The notes: generated from the sequence alone by a model not told the origin. A stretch of 64,000 nucleotides of DNA from Octopus sinensis (GCF_006345805.1 NC_043007.1:10664001-10728000); one strand, 5' to 3'. Positions 27,395 through 48,882 are shown, counted from the first letter of the stretch. Numbers and translations: made by a program.

Positions 27395-27795
27395 TATTAA
27401 ATTATTAGGAAACTATCTAACCTGCTTTTTGATTGTCCTTTATGTCGCTGTTACTTCGAGTGTTGGGACTGAAATGTGGAGTAGACATATGAATTATCCA
27501 GGTATGTTCAGTACGATATTTCTAATAATTGATTTCAAAAGATCTCGGTCGTATTAGCATTTAGATGTCGAATATCACAAATAACAAGCGATCCAAAGTG
27601 TCTCTGTTGTCGGTAGCGACGCAACGAAATAAACTGTAATGTTACATCAAATGTTTGCCTCAAAAATTGGGTGTGGTTGTCAGCTGATTTTAAGAAAGTG
27701 AAAGTAGAATTGTCCAATGAGAGAAGCGCTGTAAAGAAGTGTGTGTAGTTGAGAAACTGAAAGTGAAAATTGTACGGCAGTGCTGCCACTACTGC
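27365..27795. repeat. Inverted repeat arm (partner about 29728-30160)
   Basis: About 410 bp of upstream sequence plus the first ~10 codons are almost identical in inverted orientation; overlapping spurious ORFs 27535..28026 and 29636..29989 encode nearly the same peptide. Confidence 0.9.
27694..27776 (-). promoter_or_regulatory. Upstream module of copy 3: GAAAGTGAAAGT, CCAAT, GAAACTGAAAGTGAAA (IRF/ISRE-like; also the terminal inverted motif)
   Basis: Motifs read directly at 27694-27705, about 27714 and 27753-27768; homologous modules lie upstream of the other two intact copies. Function is inferred. Confidence 0.5.
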
Positions 27796-29747
27796 TGATA
27801 ATAATAATAATAATAGACCAACTGCTACTACTACTACTACTACTACAAATAATAACAATAATAATAATATAATAATAATAATAATAATAATAATAATAAT
27901 AATAATAATAATAATAAGAAGAAGAAGAAGAAGAAGAAGAAGAAGAAGAAGAAGAAGAAGAAGGAGAAGAAGAAGAAGACTCAGAGAGCGCAAACCTCCG
28001 CCAAGGCAACACCAACGTCCTCTCAACGATTAGCCAGAGATGGTTTTTAAAATGAGAATATCTGAAATAAAATCGACTGTTTACACAAACGAGAATACTA
28101 AAAATGAACTCGATATATATATATATATATATATATATATATACACTAGCTGCTAAGATCGGTTTCACCGCTTTCCGTGAAAAAAATAATATTTTTTTTA
28201 ATATGGGGTTGGAGGAAAGGGTATCTCTTGAAGTCGGCGTGAAAGTGAAAGAGACAGAGAGGGCGCGATTGTAGGAGTGAAGTTCTTTAGAAGTCGGCGT
28301 GAAGCTTAAGAATTGATGTGCGTGTGTGTGAGAGAGAGAGAGAGAGAGAGAGAGAAATTGTGTGTGTTGTGTGTGTGATTATTATTATCATTATTATTAT
28401 TATCATAATTATTATTATTATTATTATTATTATCATCATTATTATTATCATTATTATTATTATTATCATTATTATTATTATTATTATTATTATTATTATT
28501 ATTATTATCATTATTATTATTATTATCATTATTATTATTATTATTATTATTATCATCATTAGTATTATTATCATCATTAGTATTATTATTACACCTGTCC
28601 CAAATGTTAGGGTACCCATGATTTTTATAGGGTTTTTCTGTGAGCAGCCTTCAAACATCTTCTCCATATTGAGGATTACAAATTGTTGAATATTTTTTTT
28701 TTATTATTATGTTAATCTTCTTTACAACAACACACTCTCACCAACATACACACAAACATTTTTTGTTTTGTCCCGGACTGTTCGTAATATTTTGCTTAAT
28801 GCAAACCATTTGTGGTGAATAGAGAAATCATCATCACCATCAGTAGTAGTAGTAGTAGTAGTAGTAGTAGTAGCAGCAGCAGCAGCAGTAGTAGTAATAG
28901 TAGTAATAGTAGTAGTATTAAGAGTAGTAGCAGCAGCAGGAGCAGTTGCTGTGCCGTACAAGTTTCACTTTCTGTTTCACAATCACACCTAGTTCTTTAC
29001 AGCCGTTTATTATTATTATTATTATTATTATTATTATTATTATTATTATTAGTAGTAGTAGTAGTAGTAGTAGTAGTAGTAGTAGTAGTAGTAGCAGCAG
29101 CAGCAGCAGCAGCAGCAGTAGTAGCAGTAGAAGTAGCAGTAGCGGCAGCAGTAGCAGCAGCGGCAGCGGTTCCAGTGCCGTGCAAATTTCACTTTCAGTT
29201 TCACAACCACACTCAGTTCTTTACAGCCGTAGTAGTACTAGTAGTAGTAATGGTGGTGGTGGTGGTGATGGTTGCGTGTTTTCCACCAAACATAAACAGC
29301 CTTTTATTATTATTATTATTATTATTATTATTATTATTATTATTATTATTATTATTATTATTATTTTTATTATTATTATTATTATTATTATTATCATCAT
29401 CATCATCATCATCATTATTATTGAATGAGAGAGCAGTGCATGCCATTAAAGTGACACTGGGGTAAAATATACGAAGCCCAGTATACCCATCAGGACTACC
29501 CGTCTGATAAGGGTACACTAGGCACATGCATCACAACCATATGGGCGCGACATGGTGATCTCATATCAAGATAAACAGCGCATGACCTTCCATGTGGGGC
29601 CCAGTTTGAATTTTCTTCTGGTCGAGTAGCCCATCGTGCTCCAAAGGTCCCTGAATAAGGATTGTTTTCTATTAGTAGTAGTAGTTGTTGTTTTTGTTGT
29701 TGTTGTTCCATTATCATTAACATTATTAGCAGTAGTGGCAGCACTGC

Positions 29748-29830
29748 CGTACAATTTTCACTTTCAGTTTCTCAACTACACACACTTCTTTACAGCGCTT
29801 CTCTCATTGGACAATACAACTTTCACTTTC
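29748..29830 (+). promoter_or_regulatory. Upstream module of copy 4 (CGTACAATTTTCACTTTCAGTTTC...ATTGG...ACTTTCACTTTC)
   Basis: Inverted counterpart of 27694-27776. Confidence 0.5.
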
Positions 29831-30129
29831 TTAAAATCAGCTGACAACCACACCCAATTTTTGAGGCAAACATTTGATGTAACATCACTGTTTATTTCGT
29901 TGCGTCGCTACCGACAACAGAGACACTTTGGATCGCTTGTTATTTGTGATATTCGACATCTAAATGCTAATACGACCGAGATCTTTTGAAATCAATTATT
30001 AGAAATATCGTACTGAACATACCTGGATAATTCATATGTCTACTCCACATTTCAGACCCAACACTCGAAGTAACAGCGACATAAAGGACAATCAAAAAGC
30101 AGGTTAGATAGTTTCCTAATAATTTAATA

Positions 30130-47310: not shown

Positions 47311-47471
47311 CTAACATCAGAATCGGAACTTCCAATATAATTCAGTTCTCATATGGTTTCATTGGTTTCTCCTCTTTTATTCGTTATTTTGGTTCTATTT
47401 CTTTATTAGTTTTTTTTTTCTTTCTAGATTCTTGCTTCTTTCTATTTTTTCATTAATTATTACTCTTTATT

Positions 47472-48713
47472 TTAATGGTTCGCTTTCATTTTCTTTCTTG
47501 GATTTTCACTTTCCTTTTGAAAATAATATCTGGTATTCATACAAAATTTCTTTGGAAGTAAAAGCATCTCTTCCAGTTTAACTTCTTCACTTGATATATA
47601 TTTGAATGATTTGTTATCATTCTTATGATAAAATGGTATTTTCTCTAATGGATTTCCTTCTCCAGCTCCATAATTAATACTGGCATCACAGAATTTCTTT
47701 TTGTCCGGTTCTTTGCCTTGGTCATTTCCATCCCCGACTGTACGTTTGTGTTCATAAGACCGATGGATTATATCCTTCAATTTATTCCGAGCCTCTTTGA
47801 GATTATCATTATCCTCATTCTTTAATATCTCCTCCAAAATACTATCTGTAAAATAAGTAAATTTCTTCATATCGTCGACTTTTTCGAAAATTTTCAGGTG
47901 TTTATCTGCGGATTTGAAGGCCTCGCCAAGTAGTTTATTAAACAGAAGAACAGTTTTGTGTTGGTAAGCTGTTTTATGTAATCGATATCGAGAATAAAAC
48001 ATGTCATAGAAATCATCAACAGTTTTGTCTCTGTAGCATATTTCATTGTCTATGACTCTGGACATTTTAATCATTCTTTCGTGATCAAATGACTTTCCAA
48101 TACCAAGAAAATGGGAATCTCTCGCCAGATAATCCCATTTATCAACGTCGATGTTATAGGAAGCATTGTTGATAATTTGGTAAAGAAATTGTGGTTTCGC
48201 GGATTTTCCTGATTTACCAATGATAAGATCTTTTATGAAAGCAATTTCATCAGGCTTCAGTTTTTCTTTAACATGTGGGTTCTCTTTAAGAAGATGATCC
48301 AACATTTTACACGATGCATCTTCATGTTTCCATTTATTATCTGTTCTTCGATTTTCATTAATAAAACCTTCAGAGACATGCGAAAACGGCGCATGTCCTA
48401 AATCATGACACAAACCAGCAATTTCCACGCAAAGTATATCGCGTTCAGATACTTTCGGAGGAGCCTTTTGTTGGTTAAGATGACGAATCATTTTCCCAGC
48501 TAAGTAACATGTCCCCAGACAATGCTCGAATCTATTATGCGAAGCTGATGGAAAAACATAATAACACAAACCTAATTGTTTGATGTTCCGTAATCTCTGA
48601 AATTGTATCGTATTGATAATCTCTACACAGAGAGGCGGCAACTCCATAGATCCGTGAATAGCGTCATGAAAAACCTGATACGAATTAGTACCGTTTGTGA
48701 TGGCCATTATCAT
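47472..48713 (-). CDS. SAMHD1: SAMHD1-like HD-domain dNTP triphosphohydrolase, copy 5 (about 411-413 aa)
   Basis: Single-exon ORF with all catalytic motifs (HNRFEH, CHDLGH, WKHEDAS, IDVDKWDY) and a basic C-terminal tail RKKMKANH; the start could be the ATG at 48713 or the ATG two codons downstream. Confidence 0.92.
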   Translation of the reverse strand: MIMAITNGTNSYQVFHDAIHGSMELPPLCVEIINTIQFQRLRNIKQLGLCYYVFPSASHNRFEHCLGTCYLAGKMIRHLNQQKAPPKVSERDILCVEIAGLCHDLGHAPFSHVSEGFINENRRTDNKWKHEDASCKMLDHLLKENPHVKEKLKPDEIAFIKDLIIGKSGKSAKPQFLYQIINNASYNIDVDKWDYLARDSHFLGIGKSFDHERMIKMSRVIDNEICYRDKTVDDFYDMFYSRYRLHKTAYQHKTVLLFNKLLGEAFKSADKHLKIFEKVDDMKKFTYFTDSILEEILKNEDNDNLKEARNKLKDIIHRSYEHKRTVGDGNDQGKEPDKKKFCDASINYGAGEGNPLEKIPFYHKNDNKSFKYISSEEVKLEEMLLLPKKFCMNTRYYFQKESENPRKKMKANH

Positions 48714-48799
48714 ATTATTAGGAAAACATCTAACTTACTCTTTTGTTGTCGTTTACATGAGCGGTAGTAATAGCAGCAGCAGCAGCTGCTGACTTTTAA

Positions 48800-48882
48800 G
48801 GAAGTGAAAGTCGTGTTGTCCAATGAGAGAACTGATATAAAGAATCGGGCATTGTTGTGAAACTGAAAGTCAAACTTGTACG
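48800..48882 (-). promoter_or_regulatory. Upstream module of copy 5 (GGAAGTGAAAGT, CCAAT, GAAACTGAAAGTCAAACTTGTACG)
   Basis: Homologous to 27694-27776 although the sequence between module and ATG is about 200 bp shorter. Confidence 0.5.

What the first reader, a model, noticed from the sequence alone, without database searches (positions are those of the whole stretch)
27694..48882. Conserved IRF/ISRE-like promoter module upstream of all three intact copies
Seen: GAAACTGAAAGTGAAA, then CCAAT, then GAAAGTGAAAGT within about 85 bp (27694-27776; inverted at 29748-29830). Upstream of copy 5 the same order is kept (GAAACTGAAAGTCAAA; CCAAT; GGAAGTGAAAGT, 48800-48882) even though about 200 bp between module and ATG is missing. 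Established: GAAANNGAAA is the IRF-binding element/ISRE core, vertebrate SAMHD1 is IRF/interferon-responsive, and molluscs encode IRFs. Inference: an IRF-inducible antiviral gene battery in an invertebrate lacking interferon. Caveat: GAAACTGAAA also occurs in SINE family A and AAAGTGAAA in other repeats here.
Basis: partly seen in the sequence, partly recalled or inferred. Interest (0 to 1): 0.7.

Follow-up and report, generated by a model that had tools for sequence, protein, structure and literature searches.

The report
IRF-like promoter cassette of octopus SAMHD1
Three intact SAMHD1-like (antiviral-type) genes in an octopus gene cluster share a ~90-bp upstream cassette whose GAAA repeats look like textbook binding sites for interferon-regulatory factors. 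However, two of the three copies are one recent copy-paste, other intact paralogs lack the full cassette, and no binding or induction has been shown.

Summary
The order GAAAGTGAAAGT, then CCAAT, then GAAACTGAAAGTGAAA lies 300-374 bp upstream of two divergent intronless SAMHD1-like genes (c3, c4). A variant lies 87-161 bp upstream of a third gene (c5). The window is Octopus sinensis chromosome CM016869.1.

The strict IRF-E 12-mer GAAASYGAAASY occurs 10 times against 0.17 expected. Nine hits are in flanks of this gene family and one is in an orphan copy of the family's downstream unit; none is in the SINE.

The three modules are not three independent events. Gene c4 is a chimera: its promoter and first ~30 codons come from c3 (95-100% identical), and the rest of its coding sequence comes from another paralog. 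That leaves two lineages.

Between those lineages the module is an island of conservation: 82% identity against about 67% at synonymous sites. The GAAA cores are better kept than the spacers (P 0.003-0.05).

Four intact paralogs about 106-156 kb away keep only the distal element. O. vulgaris c5 has lost the CCAAT. Argonauta homologs have no GAAANNGAAA in the 1 kb upstream.

Best reading (about 0.45): a family-specific promoter cassette acting as an IRF-type response element. Binding, induction and the transcription start site are untested.

The parts
26219..27394 (-). c3: intact intronless SAMHD1-like gene (391 aa). Its catalytic HD motif reads HN.
   Evidence: ORF. Pfam HD domain. The O. vulgaris ortholog is intact.
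27395..27683 (-). c3 5' region between the module and the ATG. This is the family-wide conserved ~200-bp block and is probably the 5'UTR.
   Evidence: 98-100% identical to the c4 equivalent. 76-83% identical to psi1, psi2 and the L002 paralogs.
27687..27777 (.). c3 module. Components: TATA-like TTAAAAT (27687-27693 on the gene strand), proximal GAAAGTGAAAGT 27694-27705, CCAAT 27714-27718, distal GAAACTGAAAGTGAAA 27753-27768, then ATTGTACGG followed by microsatellite.
28947..29006 (-). p2: partial extra copy of the distal unit (GAAACAGAAAGTGAAACTTGTACGG), flanked by microsatellites.
29169..29230 (-). p1: partial extra copy of the distal unit (GAAACTGAAAGTGAAATTTGCACGG).
29747..29837 (.). c4 module, the mirror image of the c3 module. 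Distal element 29756-29771, ATTGG 29806-29810, proximal element 29819-29830.
   Evidence: It lies within inverted repeat I1.
29841..30129 (+). c4 5' region (conserved block, probably the 5'UTR).
30130..31299 (+). c4: intact SAMHD1-like gene (389 aa). It is a chimera: positions -460 to +90 are c3-like, and +90 to +900 are 96-100% identical to paralog Os_e.
31785..31848 (+). 3' unit of c4 (...AATACTGAAAGTGAAACTTGTACG followed by (CTA)n). It forms a 59-nt inverted repeat with the upstream distal element.
47472..48713 (-). c5: intact SAMHD1-like gene (413 aa). The ATG equivalent to those of c3 and c4 is at 48707.
48793..48883 (.). c5 module. Components: GGAAGTGAAAGT 48800-48811, CCAAT 48820-48824, GAAACTGAAAGTCAAA 48859-48874. 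It lies 87-161 bp from the ATG because about 240 bp of the 5' block is missing.
25603..25658 (-). 3' unit downstream of c3.
   Evidence: nhmmer.
46234..46284 (-). 3' unit downstream of c5. A second copy lies at 45661-45709.
14420..15620 (-). psi1: degraded SAMHD1-like copy. Its 3' unit is at 13649-13698.
15924..15979 (-). psi1 upstream: decayed homolog of the proximal half (AAGTAAAAGT ... CGAATGAGA), in the opposite orientation to c3, c4 and c5.
   Evidence: Local alignment against the c5 and solo modules: z = 5.9-7.7, 0 of 200 shuffles as good.
16939..18161 (-). psi2: degraded SAMHD1-like copy. Its 3' unit is at 16263-16312.
60067..60140 (+). Orphan copy of the 3' unit, not next to any SAMHD1-like sequence.

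Best explanation
The module is a real, family-specific promoter-proximal cassette of an expanded array of intronless, SAM-less SAMHD1-like genes in Octopus sinensis and O. vulgaris.

Its parts are two related GAAA-hexamer units with a CCAAT box between them, followed by a TATA-like TTAAAAT. The proximal unit is (GAAAGT)2. The distal unit is GAAACT-GAAAGT-GAAA.

Shown:
- The cassette was inherited with the genes.
- It was rearranged: it is inverted relative to psi1, psi2 and the distant paralog on another chromosome, and it is partly duplicated.
- It was copied from one paralog to another by recombination or gene conversion (c3 to or from c4).
- It stayed next to the coding region when c5 lost about 240 bp of the 5' block.

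Inferred (most likely mechanism):
- The GAAA repeats are IRF-E/PRDI-type sites bound by octopus IRF-family proteins.
- Together with NF-Y at the CCAAT box, they drive transcription that starts a few tens of bp downstream of the proximal element.
- This would make these genes inducible by nucleic-acid sensing pathways without interferon.
For: - Exact IRF-E 12-mers (GAAASYGAAASY) occur 10 times in the window against 0.17 expected. Nine are in flanks of this gene family and one is in an orphan copy of the family's 3' unit; none is in the SINE. There are 3 more in the paralogous cluster, again all in gene flanks, and none in about 85 kb of four other octopod loci.
- Between the two independent lineages (c3/c4 against c5) the module is 82% identical, against about 67% identity at synonymous sites (binomial P = 8e-4). 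The sequence around it is unalignable or deleted.
- Motif positions have 2 of 33 mismatches and spacer positions 15 of 62 (P = 0.046). Across seven lineages of the distal element, GAAA cores have 3 of 84 mismatches and other positions 21 of 126 (P = 0.003). The variable columns fall on the N positions of GAAANNGAAA.
- AAGTGAAAGT is also kept, in the other orientation, about 320 bp upstream of the ATG (L007 about 9640-9650) of a distant paralog on another chromosome. That fits an orientation-independent element.
- The position fits a promoter. The module sits directly upstream of the block that all paralogs share up to the ATG.
- The genes are SAMHD1 homologs. The family is expressed at protein level in O. 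vulgaris skin mucus (PMC11431876 and its supplement).
- Oyster IRFs activate ISRE and IFN-beta reporters (PMC5557890). Cephalopods have IRFs but no known interferon (PMC7665748). Human SAMHD1 is a direct IRF3 target (PMC4944147).
Against: - There are no data on binding, chromatin or induction, and the transcription start site is unknown. No transcript could be retrieved, and the RefSeq models here are chimeras.
- The c3 and c4 modules are one recent event. Gene conversion is evidently active in this family, so conversion rather than selection could explain the 82% identity with c5.
- Four intact paralogs keep only the distal element, and in two of them one GAAA core is mutated.
- O. vulgaris c5 has CTAAT instead of CCAAT, and O. 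vulgaris c3 has a 2-bp insertion in the proximal element.
- Between the two species the module diverges at about the synonymous rate, so this comparison has no power.
- The two Argonauta homologs have no GAAANNGAAA within 1 kb upstream.
- GAAAST hexamer repeats are low-complexity sequence in a region full of microsatellites.
- The statistics were computed on post-hoc chosen columns and on related lineages.
Confidence: 0.45

Rival explanations
1. The module is inherited sequence with no regulatory role. It would be a piece of the gene family's duplication unit that sits beside microsatellites and is kept similar among copies by recent duplication and gene conversion. The IRF-like look of a (GAAAST)2-3 hexamer repeat would then be coincidental.
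For: - c3 and c4 upstream regions are 95-100% identical while their coding sequences have dS = 0.38, so conversion is demonstrably active.
- A related GAAAGTGAAA unit lies downstream of nearly every copy, pseudogenes included. Because pseudogenes keep it, its presence does not track gene integrity.
- A solo module fragment sits at a non-promoter site in O. vulgaris.
- CCAAT is lost in O. vulgaris c5.
- The full module is absent from four intact paralogs.
Against: - GAAA cores are preferentially conserved relative to adjacent positions.
- The hexamer run never expands or contracts as a microsatellite would.
- AAGTGAAAGT is retained through an orientation change in a distant paralog.
- In the pseudogenes psi1 and psi2 the proximal element and the CCAAT have decayed to AAGTAAAAGT and CGAAT.
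Confidence: 0.3
2. The cassette is a functional cis-element, but it is read by a factor other than an activating IRF. One candidate is a PRDM1/Blimp-1-type repressor (site AGTGAAAGT). Another is an ETS factor, alone or with an IRF (c5 reads GGAAGTGAAA, an ETS-IRF composite form). Under this reading it would control tissue-specific or basal expression rather than virus-induced expression.
For: - AAGTGAAAGT is the best-kept core. It is present in c3, c4, c5, the solo fragment and L007/L008.
- From established knowledge, PRDM1 and IRF1/2 recognise overlapping sequences, and GGAANNGAAA is the ETS-IRF composite element.
- Family members are detected constitutively in skin mucus and change with husbandry and senescence.
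Against: No data bear on any of these factors in cephalopods. The triple GAAA with 6-bp phasing in the distal element is more typical of multimerised IRF sites.
Confidence: 0.15
3. The module is a fragment of a mobile element (a microsatellite-tailed retroposon or a MITE-like element) that happened to land upstream of the ancestral gene.
For: - The distal element plus TTGTACG plus an (ACT)n tail resembles a short tailed repeat. One orphan copy exists at 60067-60140, next to a SINE fragment.
- A solo module copy appeared in O. vulgaris since its split from O. sinensis.
- Each gene is bracketed by inverted copies of the unit.
Against: - nhmmer with the module and with the 3' unit finds copies only in SAMHD1-like gene flanks, apart from one orphan and one solo copy, in about 236 kb searched.
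- No target-site duplications or element termini were found.
- Even if true, this does not exclude co-option as an IRF element.
Confidence: 0.07

Closest known systems
IRF-E / PRDI-PRDIII elements and synthetic (AAGTGA)n hexamer repeats of the vertebrate IFN-beta promoter (established knowledge)
   Same: The sequence is the same. GAAAGTGAAAGT equals (GAAAGT)2, and there is a tandem run of GAAA with 6-bp phasing. The location is promoter-proximal, and the element works in either orientation.
   Different: No interferon gene is involved, and binding is untested. The octopus module has a CCAAT box between the two sites and no adjacent kappaB or ATF site.
IRF3-responsive human SAMHD1 promoter (PMC4944147)
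   Same: The gene family is homologous and the regulator class is the same as proposed here. In human the IRF3 site lies close to the transcription start site (-31 to +19).
   Different: The octopus genes are intronless and lack the SAM domain. They form a lineage-specific tandem expansion, and the promoters are not homologous. Nothing was tested here.
Oyster IRF / ISRE-reporter axis and 'interferon-like' system (PMC5557890, PMC8218723); shrimp IRF-Vago (PMC4602278)
   Same: These are invertebrates without canonical interferon in which IRFs activate GAAA-type elements and antiviral genes.
   Different: Those studies used mammalian reporter elements or other target genes. No cephalopod target promoter and no SAMHD1 target has been described in the searched literature.
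ISGF3-type ISRE (A/G)NGAAANNGAAACT
   Same: The GAAANNGAAA core is shared.
   Different: The exact GAAANNGAAACT form is absent from the c3, c4 and c5 modules. It occurs only in the 3' units, the orphan copy and p2. IRF9/STAT2-type complexes are not known in cephalopods.

Membership tests
IRF-E / PRDI-type IRF binding element | Sequence G(A)AAA(G/C)(T/C)GAAA(G/C)(T/C) | tested here: met
   GAAASYGAAASY is present at 27694, 27753, 29760, 29819 and 48859. The c5 proximal element is the one-off variant GGAAGTGAAAGT.
IRF-E / PRDI-type IRF binding element | Located in the promoter or enhancer of the regulated gene, near the transcription start site | tested here: inconclusive
   The module lies 87-374 bp upstream of the ATGs, directly upstream of the family-wide 5' block. 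The transcription start site is unknown because no transcript was retrievable.
IRF-E / PRDI-type IRF binding element | Bound by an IRF-family DNA-binding domain | not testable with these tools
   This needs EMSA, DAP-seq or ChIP. The literature shows only that oyster IRFs activate mammalian ISRE reporters (PMC5557890) and that a squid genome encodes IRFs (PMC7665748).
IRF-E / PRDI-type IRF binding element | Evolutionary constraint on the GAAA cores | tested here: met
   Cores have 3 of 84 mismatches and non-core positions 21 of 126 (P = 0.003). For c5 against c4, motif positions have 2 of 33 and spacers 15 of 62 (P = 0.046). Caveat: the lineages are related and the columns were chosen post hoc.
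ISGF3-type ISRE | 12-mer GAAANNGAAACT | tested here: not met
   One search finds 4 hits (5630, 28961, 31830, 60122), none in the c3, c4 or c5 modules.
CCAAT box / NF-Y site | CCAAT pentamer conserved at a fixed place in the promoter | tested here: inconclusive
   CCAATGAGAGAA is identical in the three O. sinensis modules, and the O. vulgaris solo copy keeps CCAATGAGAGA. It reads CTAAT in O. vulgaris c5. It is absent from the L002 paralogs, which carry a different CCAAT at about -190.
SAMHD1 (dNTP triphosphohydrolase) - the genes downstream | HD phosphohydrolase domain homologous to SAMHD1 | tested here: met
   Pfam HD domain. Against human SAMHD1 structures, E = 7e-76, with residues 1-316 aligned to 115-459.
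SAMHD1 (dNTP triphosphohydrolase) - the genes downstream | N-terminal SAM domain | tested here: not met
   Pfam finds no SAM domain. The proteins start at the position of human residue 115.
SAMHD1 (dNTP triphosphohydrolase) - the genes downstream | Intact catalytic His-Asp (HD) dyad | tested here: inconclusive
   c4 and c5 read LCHDLGH. c3 and the Os_a-type paralogs read LCHNLGH.
Transposable-element-derived regulatory cassette | Dispersed copies outside the gene family, with element termini or target-site duplications | tested here: not met
   nhmmer over about 236 kb finds only gene-linked copies, plus one orphan and one solo copy. The sample is small.

The most novel reading that the evidence does not exclude
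A portable IRF-responsive promoter cassette is being moved among SAMHD1-like paralogs by gene conversion, inversion and local duplication. The evidence is the c3/c4 promoter swap, the solo copy in O. vulgaris, and the GAAA units that bracket each gene in inverted orientation. This process would be assembling an interferon-independent, IRF-driven array of restriction-factor genes in octopuses. About half of the intact members examined (c3 and Os_a/b/c, 4 of 7) are catalytically altered (HD to HN) and could act as regulators or decoys.
Probability: 0.2. Interest if true: 0.6.

Novelty: new member of a known kind. Interest (0 to 1): 0.4.

Why it matters
If the cassette binds octopus IRFs, it would be the first defined IRF target promoter in a cephalopod. 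It would also be a concrete handle for asking how animals without interferon switch on cell-intrinsic antiviral genes, using reporter constructs and motif scans for a cephalopod 'ISG-like' set. It would further show a lineage-specific expansion of SAMHD1-like genes whose regulation is spread by promoter swapping. If it does not bind, the locus is an ordinary tandem gene family in microsatellite-rich DNA.

Tried and rejected
1. Transcript or TSS evidence. Exact-protein look-ups for c3, c4 and c5 found nothing. The only RefSeq models over these genes are chimeras joining different paralogs (XP_029642718.2 = c5 N-terminus + c3 C-terminus; P0002 = Os_a + Os_e). They say nothing about the TSS.
2. 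O. bimaculoides orthologs. The contigs are too short (68 and 228 bp upstream) to reach the module.
3. Deep conservation. The two Argonauta hians homologs (about 52% amino-acid identity) share no alignable upstream sequence with Octopus and have no GAAANNGAAA in the 1 kb upstream.
4. Mobile-element origin. The module and the 3' unit were searched with nhmmer against all held sequence. Copies are confined to the gene family, so this reading was downgraded.
5. Inversion test. A first alignment of psi1/psi2 upstream sequence with the c3 module was not significant. A second test with the c5 and solo versions was significant only in the inverted orientation.
6. L002 as an ortholog. I first took L002 for the O. 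sinensis ortholog of an O. vulgaris window and rejected that. P0018 and L009 show that the window itself is O. sinensis CM016869.1, and L002 is a paralogous cluster whose locus ends about 106 kb away.
7. Between-species (O. sinensis against O. vulgaris) constraint on the module. Divergence is about 1%, equal to the synonymous rate, so the comparison has no power.
8. Other octopus antiviral genes. Testing their promoters for the same motif (the 'battery' idea) was not feasible, because homology searches list only the 120 best hits and octopus sequences would not surface.
9. The bacterial promoter scanner was not used because it does not apply to an animal genome.

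
Full report
**What is there**

The window carries a cluster of intronless SAMHD1-like genes. Three are intact:
- c3, 26219-27394, minus strand, 391 aa
- c4, 30130-31299, plus strand, 389 aa
- c5, 47472-48713, minus strand, 413 aa

There are also two degraded copies (psi1 14420-15620, psi2 16939-18161) and smaller fragments (4879-5376, 5086-5703, 7021-7288).

The proteins have an HD domain. 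They align to human SAMHD1 residues 115-459 with E = 7e-76. They therefore lack the SAM domain and the C-terminal tail.

The window is Octopus sinensis chromosome CM016869.1, within about 10.67-10.73 Mb. Three results show this. A 262-aa ORF of psi1 is on record from that chromosome. The RefSeq model XP_029642718.2 spans exactly from the c5 ATG to the c3 stop. The O. vulgaris chromosome OX597824.1 is collinear with the window at 97-98% identity.

**The observation**

Seen from each gene, the order is:
- microsatellite
- CCGTACAA
- the distal element (TTTCACTTTCAGTTTC on the sense strand, GAAACTGAAAGTGAAA on the other)
- about 34 bp of spacer
- CCAAT, in reverse
- the proximal element (GAAAGT)2
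- TTAAAAT
- the 5' block leading to the ATG

The module is 300-374 bp from the ATG in c3 and c4. It is 87-161 bp from the ATG in c5, where about 240 bp of the 5' block is replaced by 32 unrelated bases.

The composite pattern occurs three times and in none of 100 shuffles.

**Is the motif just background?**

GAAANNGAAA is 14-fold over shuffles (48 against 3.5). However, 12 hits are in a SINE (GGTAGACGGAAACTGAAAGAAG), 11 in module copies and 9 in a third repeat.

The stricter IRF-E form GAAASYGAAASY removes the SINE. It leaves 10 hits against 0.17 expected. Nine are in flanks of the SAMHD1-like genes and one is in an orphan copy of the family's 3' unit at 60122. In the other loci it occurs only in flanks of paralogs or orthologs of this family. 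It is absent from about 85 kb around four other octopod SAMHD1-like genes. GAAAGTGAAA is about 10 times denser in the 1 kb upstream of the genes than elsewhere.

The 'third repeat' is not unrelated sequence. It is a unit of the form (CA)n ... AATACTGAAAGTGAAACTTGTACG (CTA)n. It lies 0.5-1.8 kb downstream of nearly every copy, pseudogenes included. It is the reverse complement of the upstream distal element, so each gene is bracketed by inverted arms of about 60 nt. Only one orphan copy exists, at 60067-60140.

**Independence of the three copies**

The c3 and c4 coding sequences differ by dS = 0.38. The c4 coding sequence differs from paralog Os_e, more than 100 kb away, by only dS = 0.076.

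A sliding comparison shows c4 is 95-100% identical to c3 from -460 to about +90. It is 96-100% identical to Os_e from +90 to +900. So c4 is a recombinant: a c3-type promoter and first ~30 codons joined to an Os_e-type body.

The same structure exists in O. vulgaris, so the event predates the species split. The c3 and c4 modules are therefore one event, and the evidence rests on two lineages: c3/c4 and c5.

**Constraint**

Between those lineages the module is 82% identical over 95-96 bp. Synonymous sites are about 67% identical (pS = 0.33), giving a binomial P of 8e-4. The flanks on both sides are unalignable or deleted.

Motif positions show 2 mismatches in 33 and spacers 15 in 62 (P = 0.046).

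The distal unit can be aligned across seven lineages: c3/c4, c5, the two extra copies p1 and p2, and paralogs Os_a/b, Os_c and Os_e. GAAA cores show 3 mismatches in 84 and other positions 21 in 126 (P = 0.003). The most variable columns are the N positions of GAAANNGAAA.

The caveats are related lineages, post-hoc column choice, and gene conversion as an alternative to selection.

**History of the cassette**

The proximal and distal elements align to each other (2 of 1000 shuffles as good). They look like duplicates of one unit.

A distant paralog on another chromosome was examined in both species (L007 in O. vulgaris, L008 in O. sinensis). It has AAAGTGAAAGTTGTGTT ... GTCGTCAGCTGATTTT in the sense orientation just upstream of the same 5' block.

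psi1 and psi2 have a decayed version there, AAGTAAAAGT ... CGAATGAGA. The alignments are significant only in the inverted orientation.

The c3/c4/c5 form is therefore an inverted and partly duplicated derivative of an older unit.

**What speaks against a strongly selected three-part module**

- Four intact paralogs about 106-156 kb away (Os_a, Os_b, Os_c, Os_e, 407-413 aa) have only the distal unit, at -520 to -660. It is intact in Os_a and Os_b (GAAATTGAAAGTGAAA), and one core is mutated in each of Os_c and Os_e. They have no module CCAAT or proximal element.
- Those paralogs instead carry a CCAAT at about -190 in the shared 5' block. At that position c3 and c4 read CTAAT, and c5 has lost the block.
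- In O. vulgaris the c5 module reads CTAAT, and the c3 proximal element has a 2-bp insertion (GAAAGTGAAAAAGT).
- The two Argonauta homologs have no GAAANNGAAA within 1 kb upstream and no alignable promoter.
- The exact ISGF3-type ISRE GAAANNGAAACT is not in the three modules.

**Context from the literature**

- Oyster IRF2 and IRF8 activate human ISRE and IFN-beta reporters (PMC5557890).
- The Euprymna genome has IRFs and JAK/STAT but no recognisable interferon (PMC7665748).
- The human SAMHD1 promoter is a direct IRF3 target (PMC4944147).
- SAMHD1-like proteins are found in O. vulgaris skin mucus and change with husbandry and senescence. One is A0A6P7SWR5 (= XP_029642705.1 = Os_e), detected by a peptide that c4 does not share. 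Another is a 534-aa paralog (PMC11431876 and its supplement).
- No paper in the library links SAMHD1 regulation to cephalopods.

**Verdict**

The most likely reading (about 0.45) is a family-specific promoter cassette whose GAAA repeats are IRF-type sites. The main rival (about 0.3) is inherited, conversion-homogenised sequence without function. Binding by another factor (PRDM1 or ETS type, about 0.15) and a mobile-element origin (about 0.07) remain possible.

Nothing here is outside known kinds of regulation. The value lies in giving a concrete, testable cephalopod candidate.

Noticed in passing
window 29670-30220 against 27300-27854, and L002 38330-39553: c4 is a recombinant gene. Its promoter, 5' block and first ~30 codons are c3-type (95-100% identical). 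Codons ~30-300 are 96-100% identical to paralog Os_e, more than 100 kb away. This is a natural promoter swap, and it is shared with O. vulgaris.
   Followed up: yes
window 27070-27110 (c3); L002 Os_a, Os_b, Os_c: c3 and the Os_a-type paralogs read LCHNLGHGPFSY where c4, c5 and Os_e read [12 protein letters not shown]. The Asp of the catalytic HD dyad is Asn, yet the genes stay intact (paralog dN/dS about 0.4; c3 ortholog dN/dS 0.23). These members may be catalytically inactive.
   Followed up: partly
L010 12874-12930 (Argonauta hians): The sequence GGGAATTTCC GAAAACGAAAAGTGAAAGAAAGTGAAAGAAAAAGAAA lies 1.7 kb downstream of a SAMHD1-like gene. It is a textbook kappaB site abutting a run of five GAAA repeats, resembling the IFN-beta enhancer. 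It seems to sit inside a repeat with a (TA)n tail, and it is a single copy in the held loci.
   Followed up: partly
L004 14877-15302 against window 34812-35118: At an orthologous site O. vulgaris has a solo module fragment (L004 14975-15066, with most of the distal GAAA repeat deleted) plus a SINE. O. sinensis has a different SINE there. This is a recent rearrangement that copied promoter sequence to a non-promoter site.
   Followed up: partly
window 26219-48713 (= L009 10001-32495); L002 10001-39553: RefSeq gene models are paralog chimeras. XP_029642718.2 joins the c5 N-terminal half to the c3 C-terminal half across 22.5 kb. 'Isoform X1' (P0002) joins Os_a to Os_e across 29.5 kb. c3, c4 and c5 as read here are not in the protein collection.
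   Followed up: yes
window 13649-13698, 16263-16312, 25603-25658, 31785-31848, 45661-45709, 46234-46284, 5045-5091, 5624-5674, 3631-3680; orphan at 60067-60140: A conserved unit, (CA)n ... GCAGTAGRTTAATACTGAAAGTGAAA ... (ACT)n, lies downstream of nearly every SAMHD1-like copy. It is the inverted counterpart of the upstream distal element, so each gene is bracketed by inverted arms of about 60 nt plus microsatellites.
   Followed up: partly
about -190 from the ATG in psi1, psi2, the L002 paralogs, L007 and L008; window about 27580 and 29940 for c3 and c4: Most paralogs have AAATGCCAAT in the shared 5' block. c3 and c4 read AAATGCTAAT there and c5 lacks the block. Only c3, c4 and c5 have the module CCAAT, which may be a compensatory shift of the CCAAT box.
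   Followed up: no
window 47472-48713 against L005 5779-7017: Between O. sinensis and O. vulgaris, c5 has 12 nonsynonymous and 3 synonymous differences (ratio 0.95). The ratios are 0.23 for c3 and 0.46 for c4. This suggests relaxed or diversifying selection on c5, but the counts are small.
   Followed up: partly
window 6768, 8811, 21617, 32144, 34842, 36731, 39577, 41359, 52371, 61951, 63545; L006 3266 and 13192; L010 3881, 4056 and 5872: The SINE carrying GGTAGACGGAAACTGAAAGAAGCC is shared by Octopus and Argonauta, so it is an old octopod SINE family. Its GAAACTGAAAGA does not fit the strict IRF-E 12-mer.
   Followed up: partly
window 1-4144 against 41079-45318: A block of about 4 kb is duplicated within the window (about 95-96% identity via the O. 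vulgaris locus). The duplication includes copies of the 3' unit and long trinucleotide arrays.
   Followed up: no
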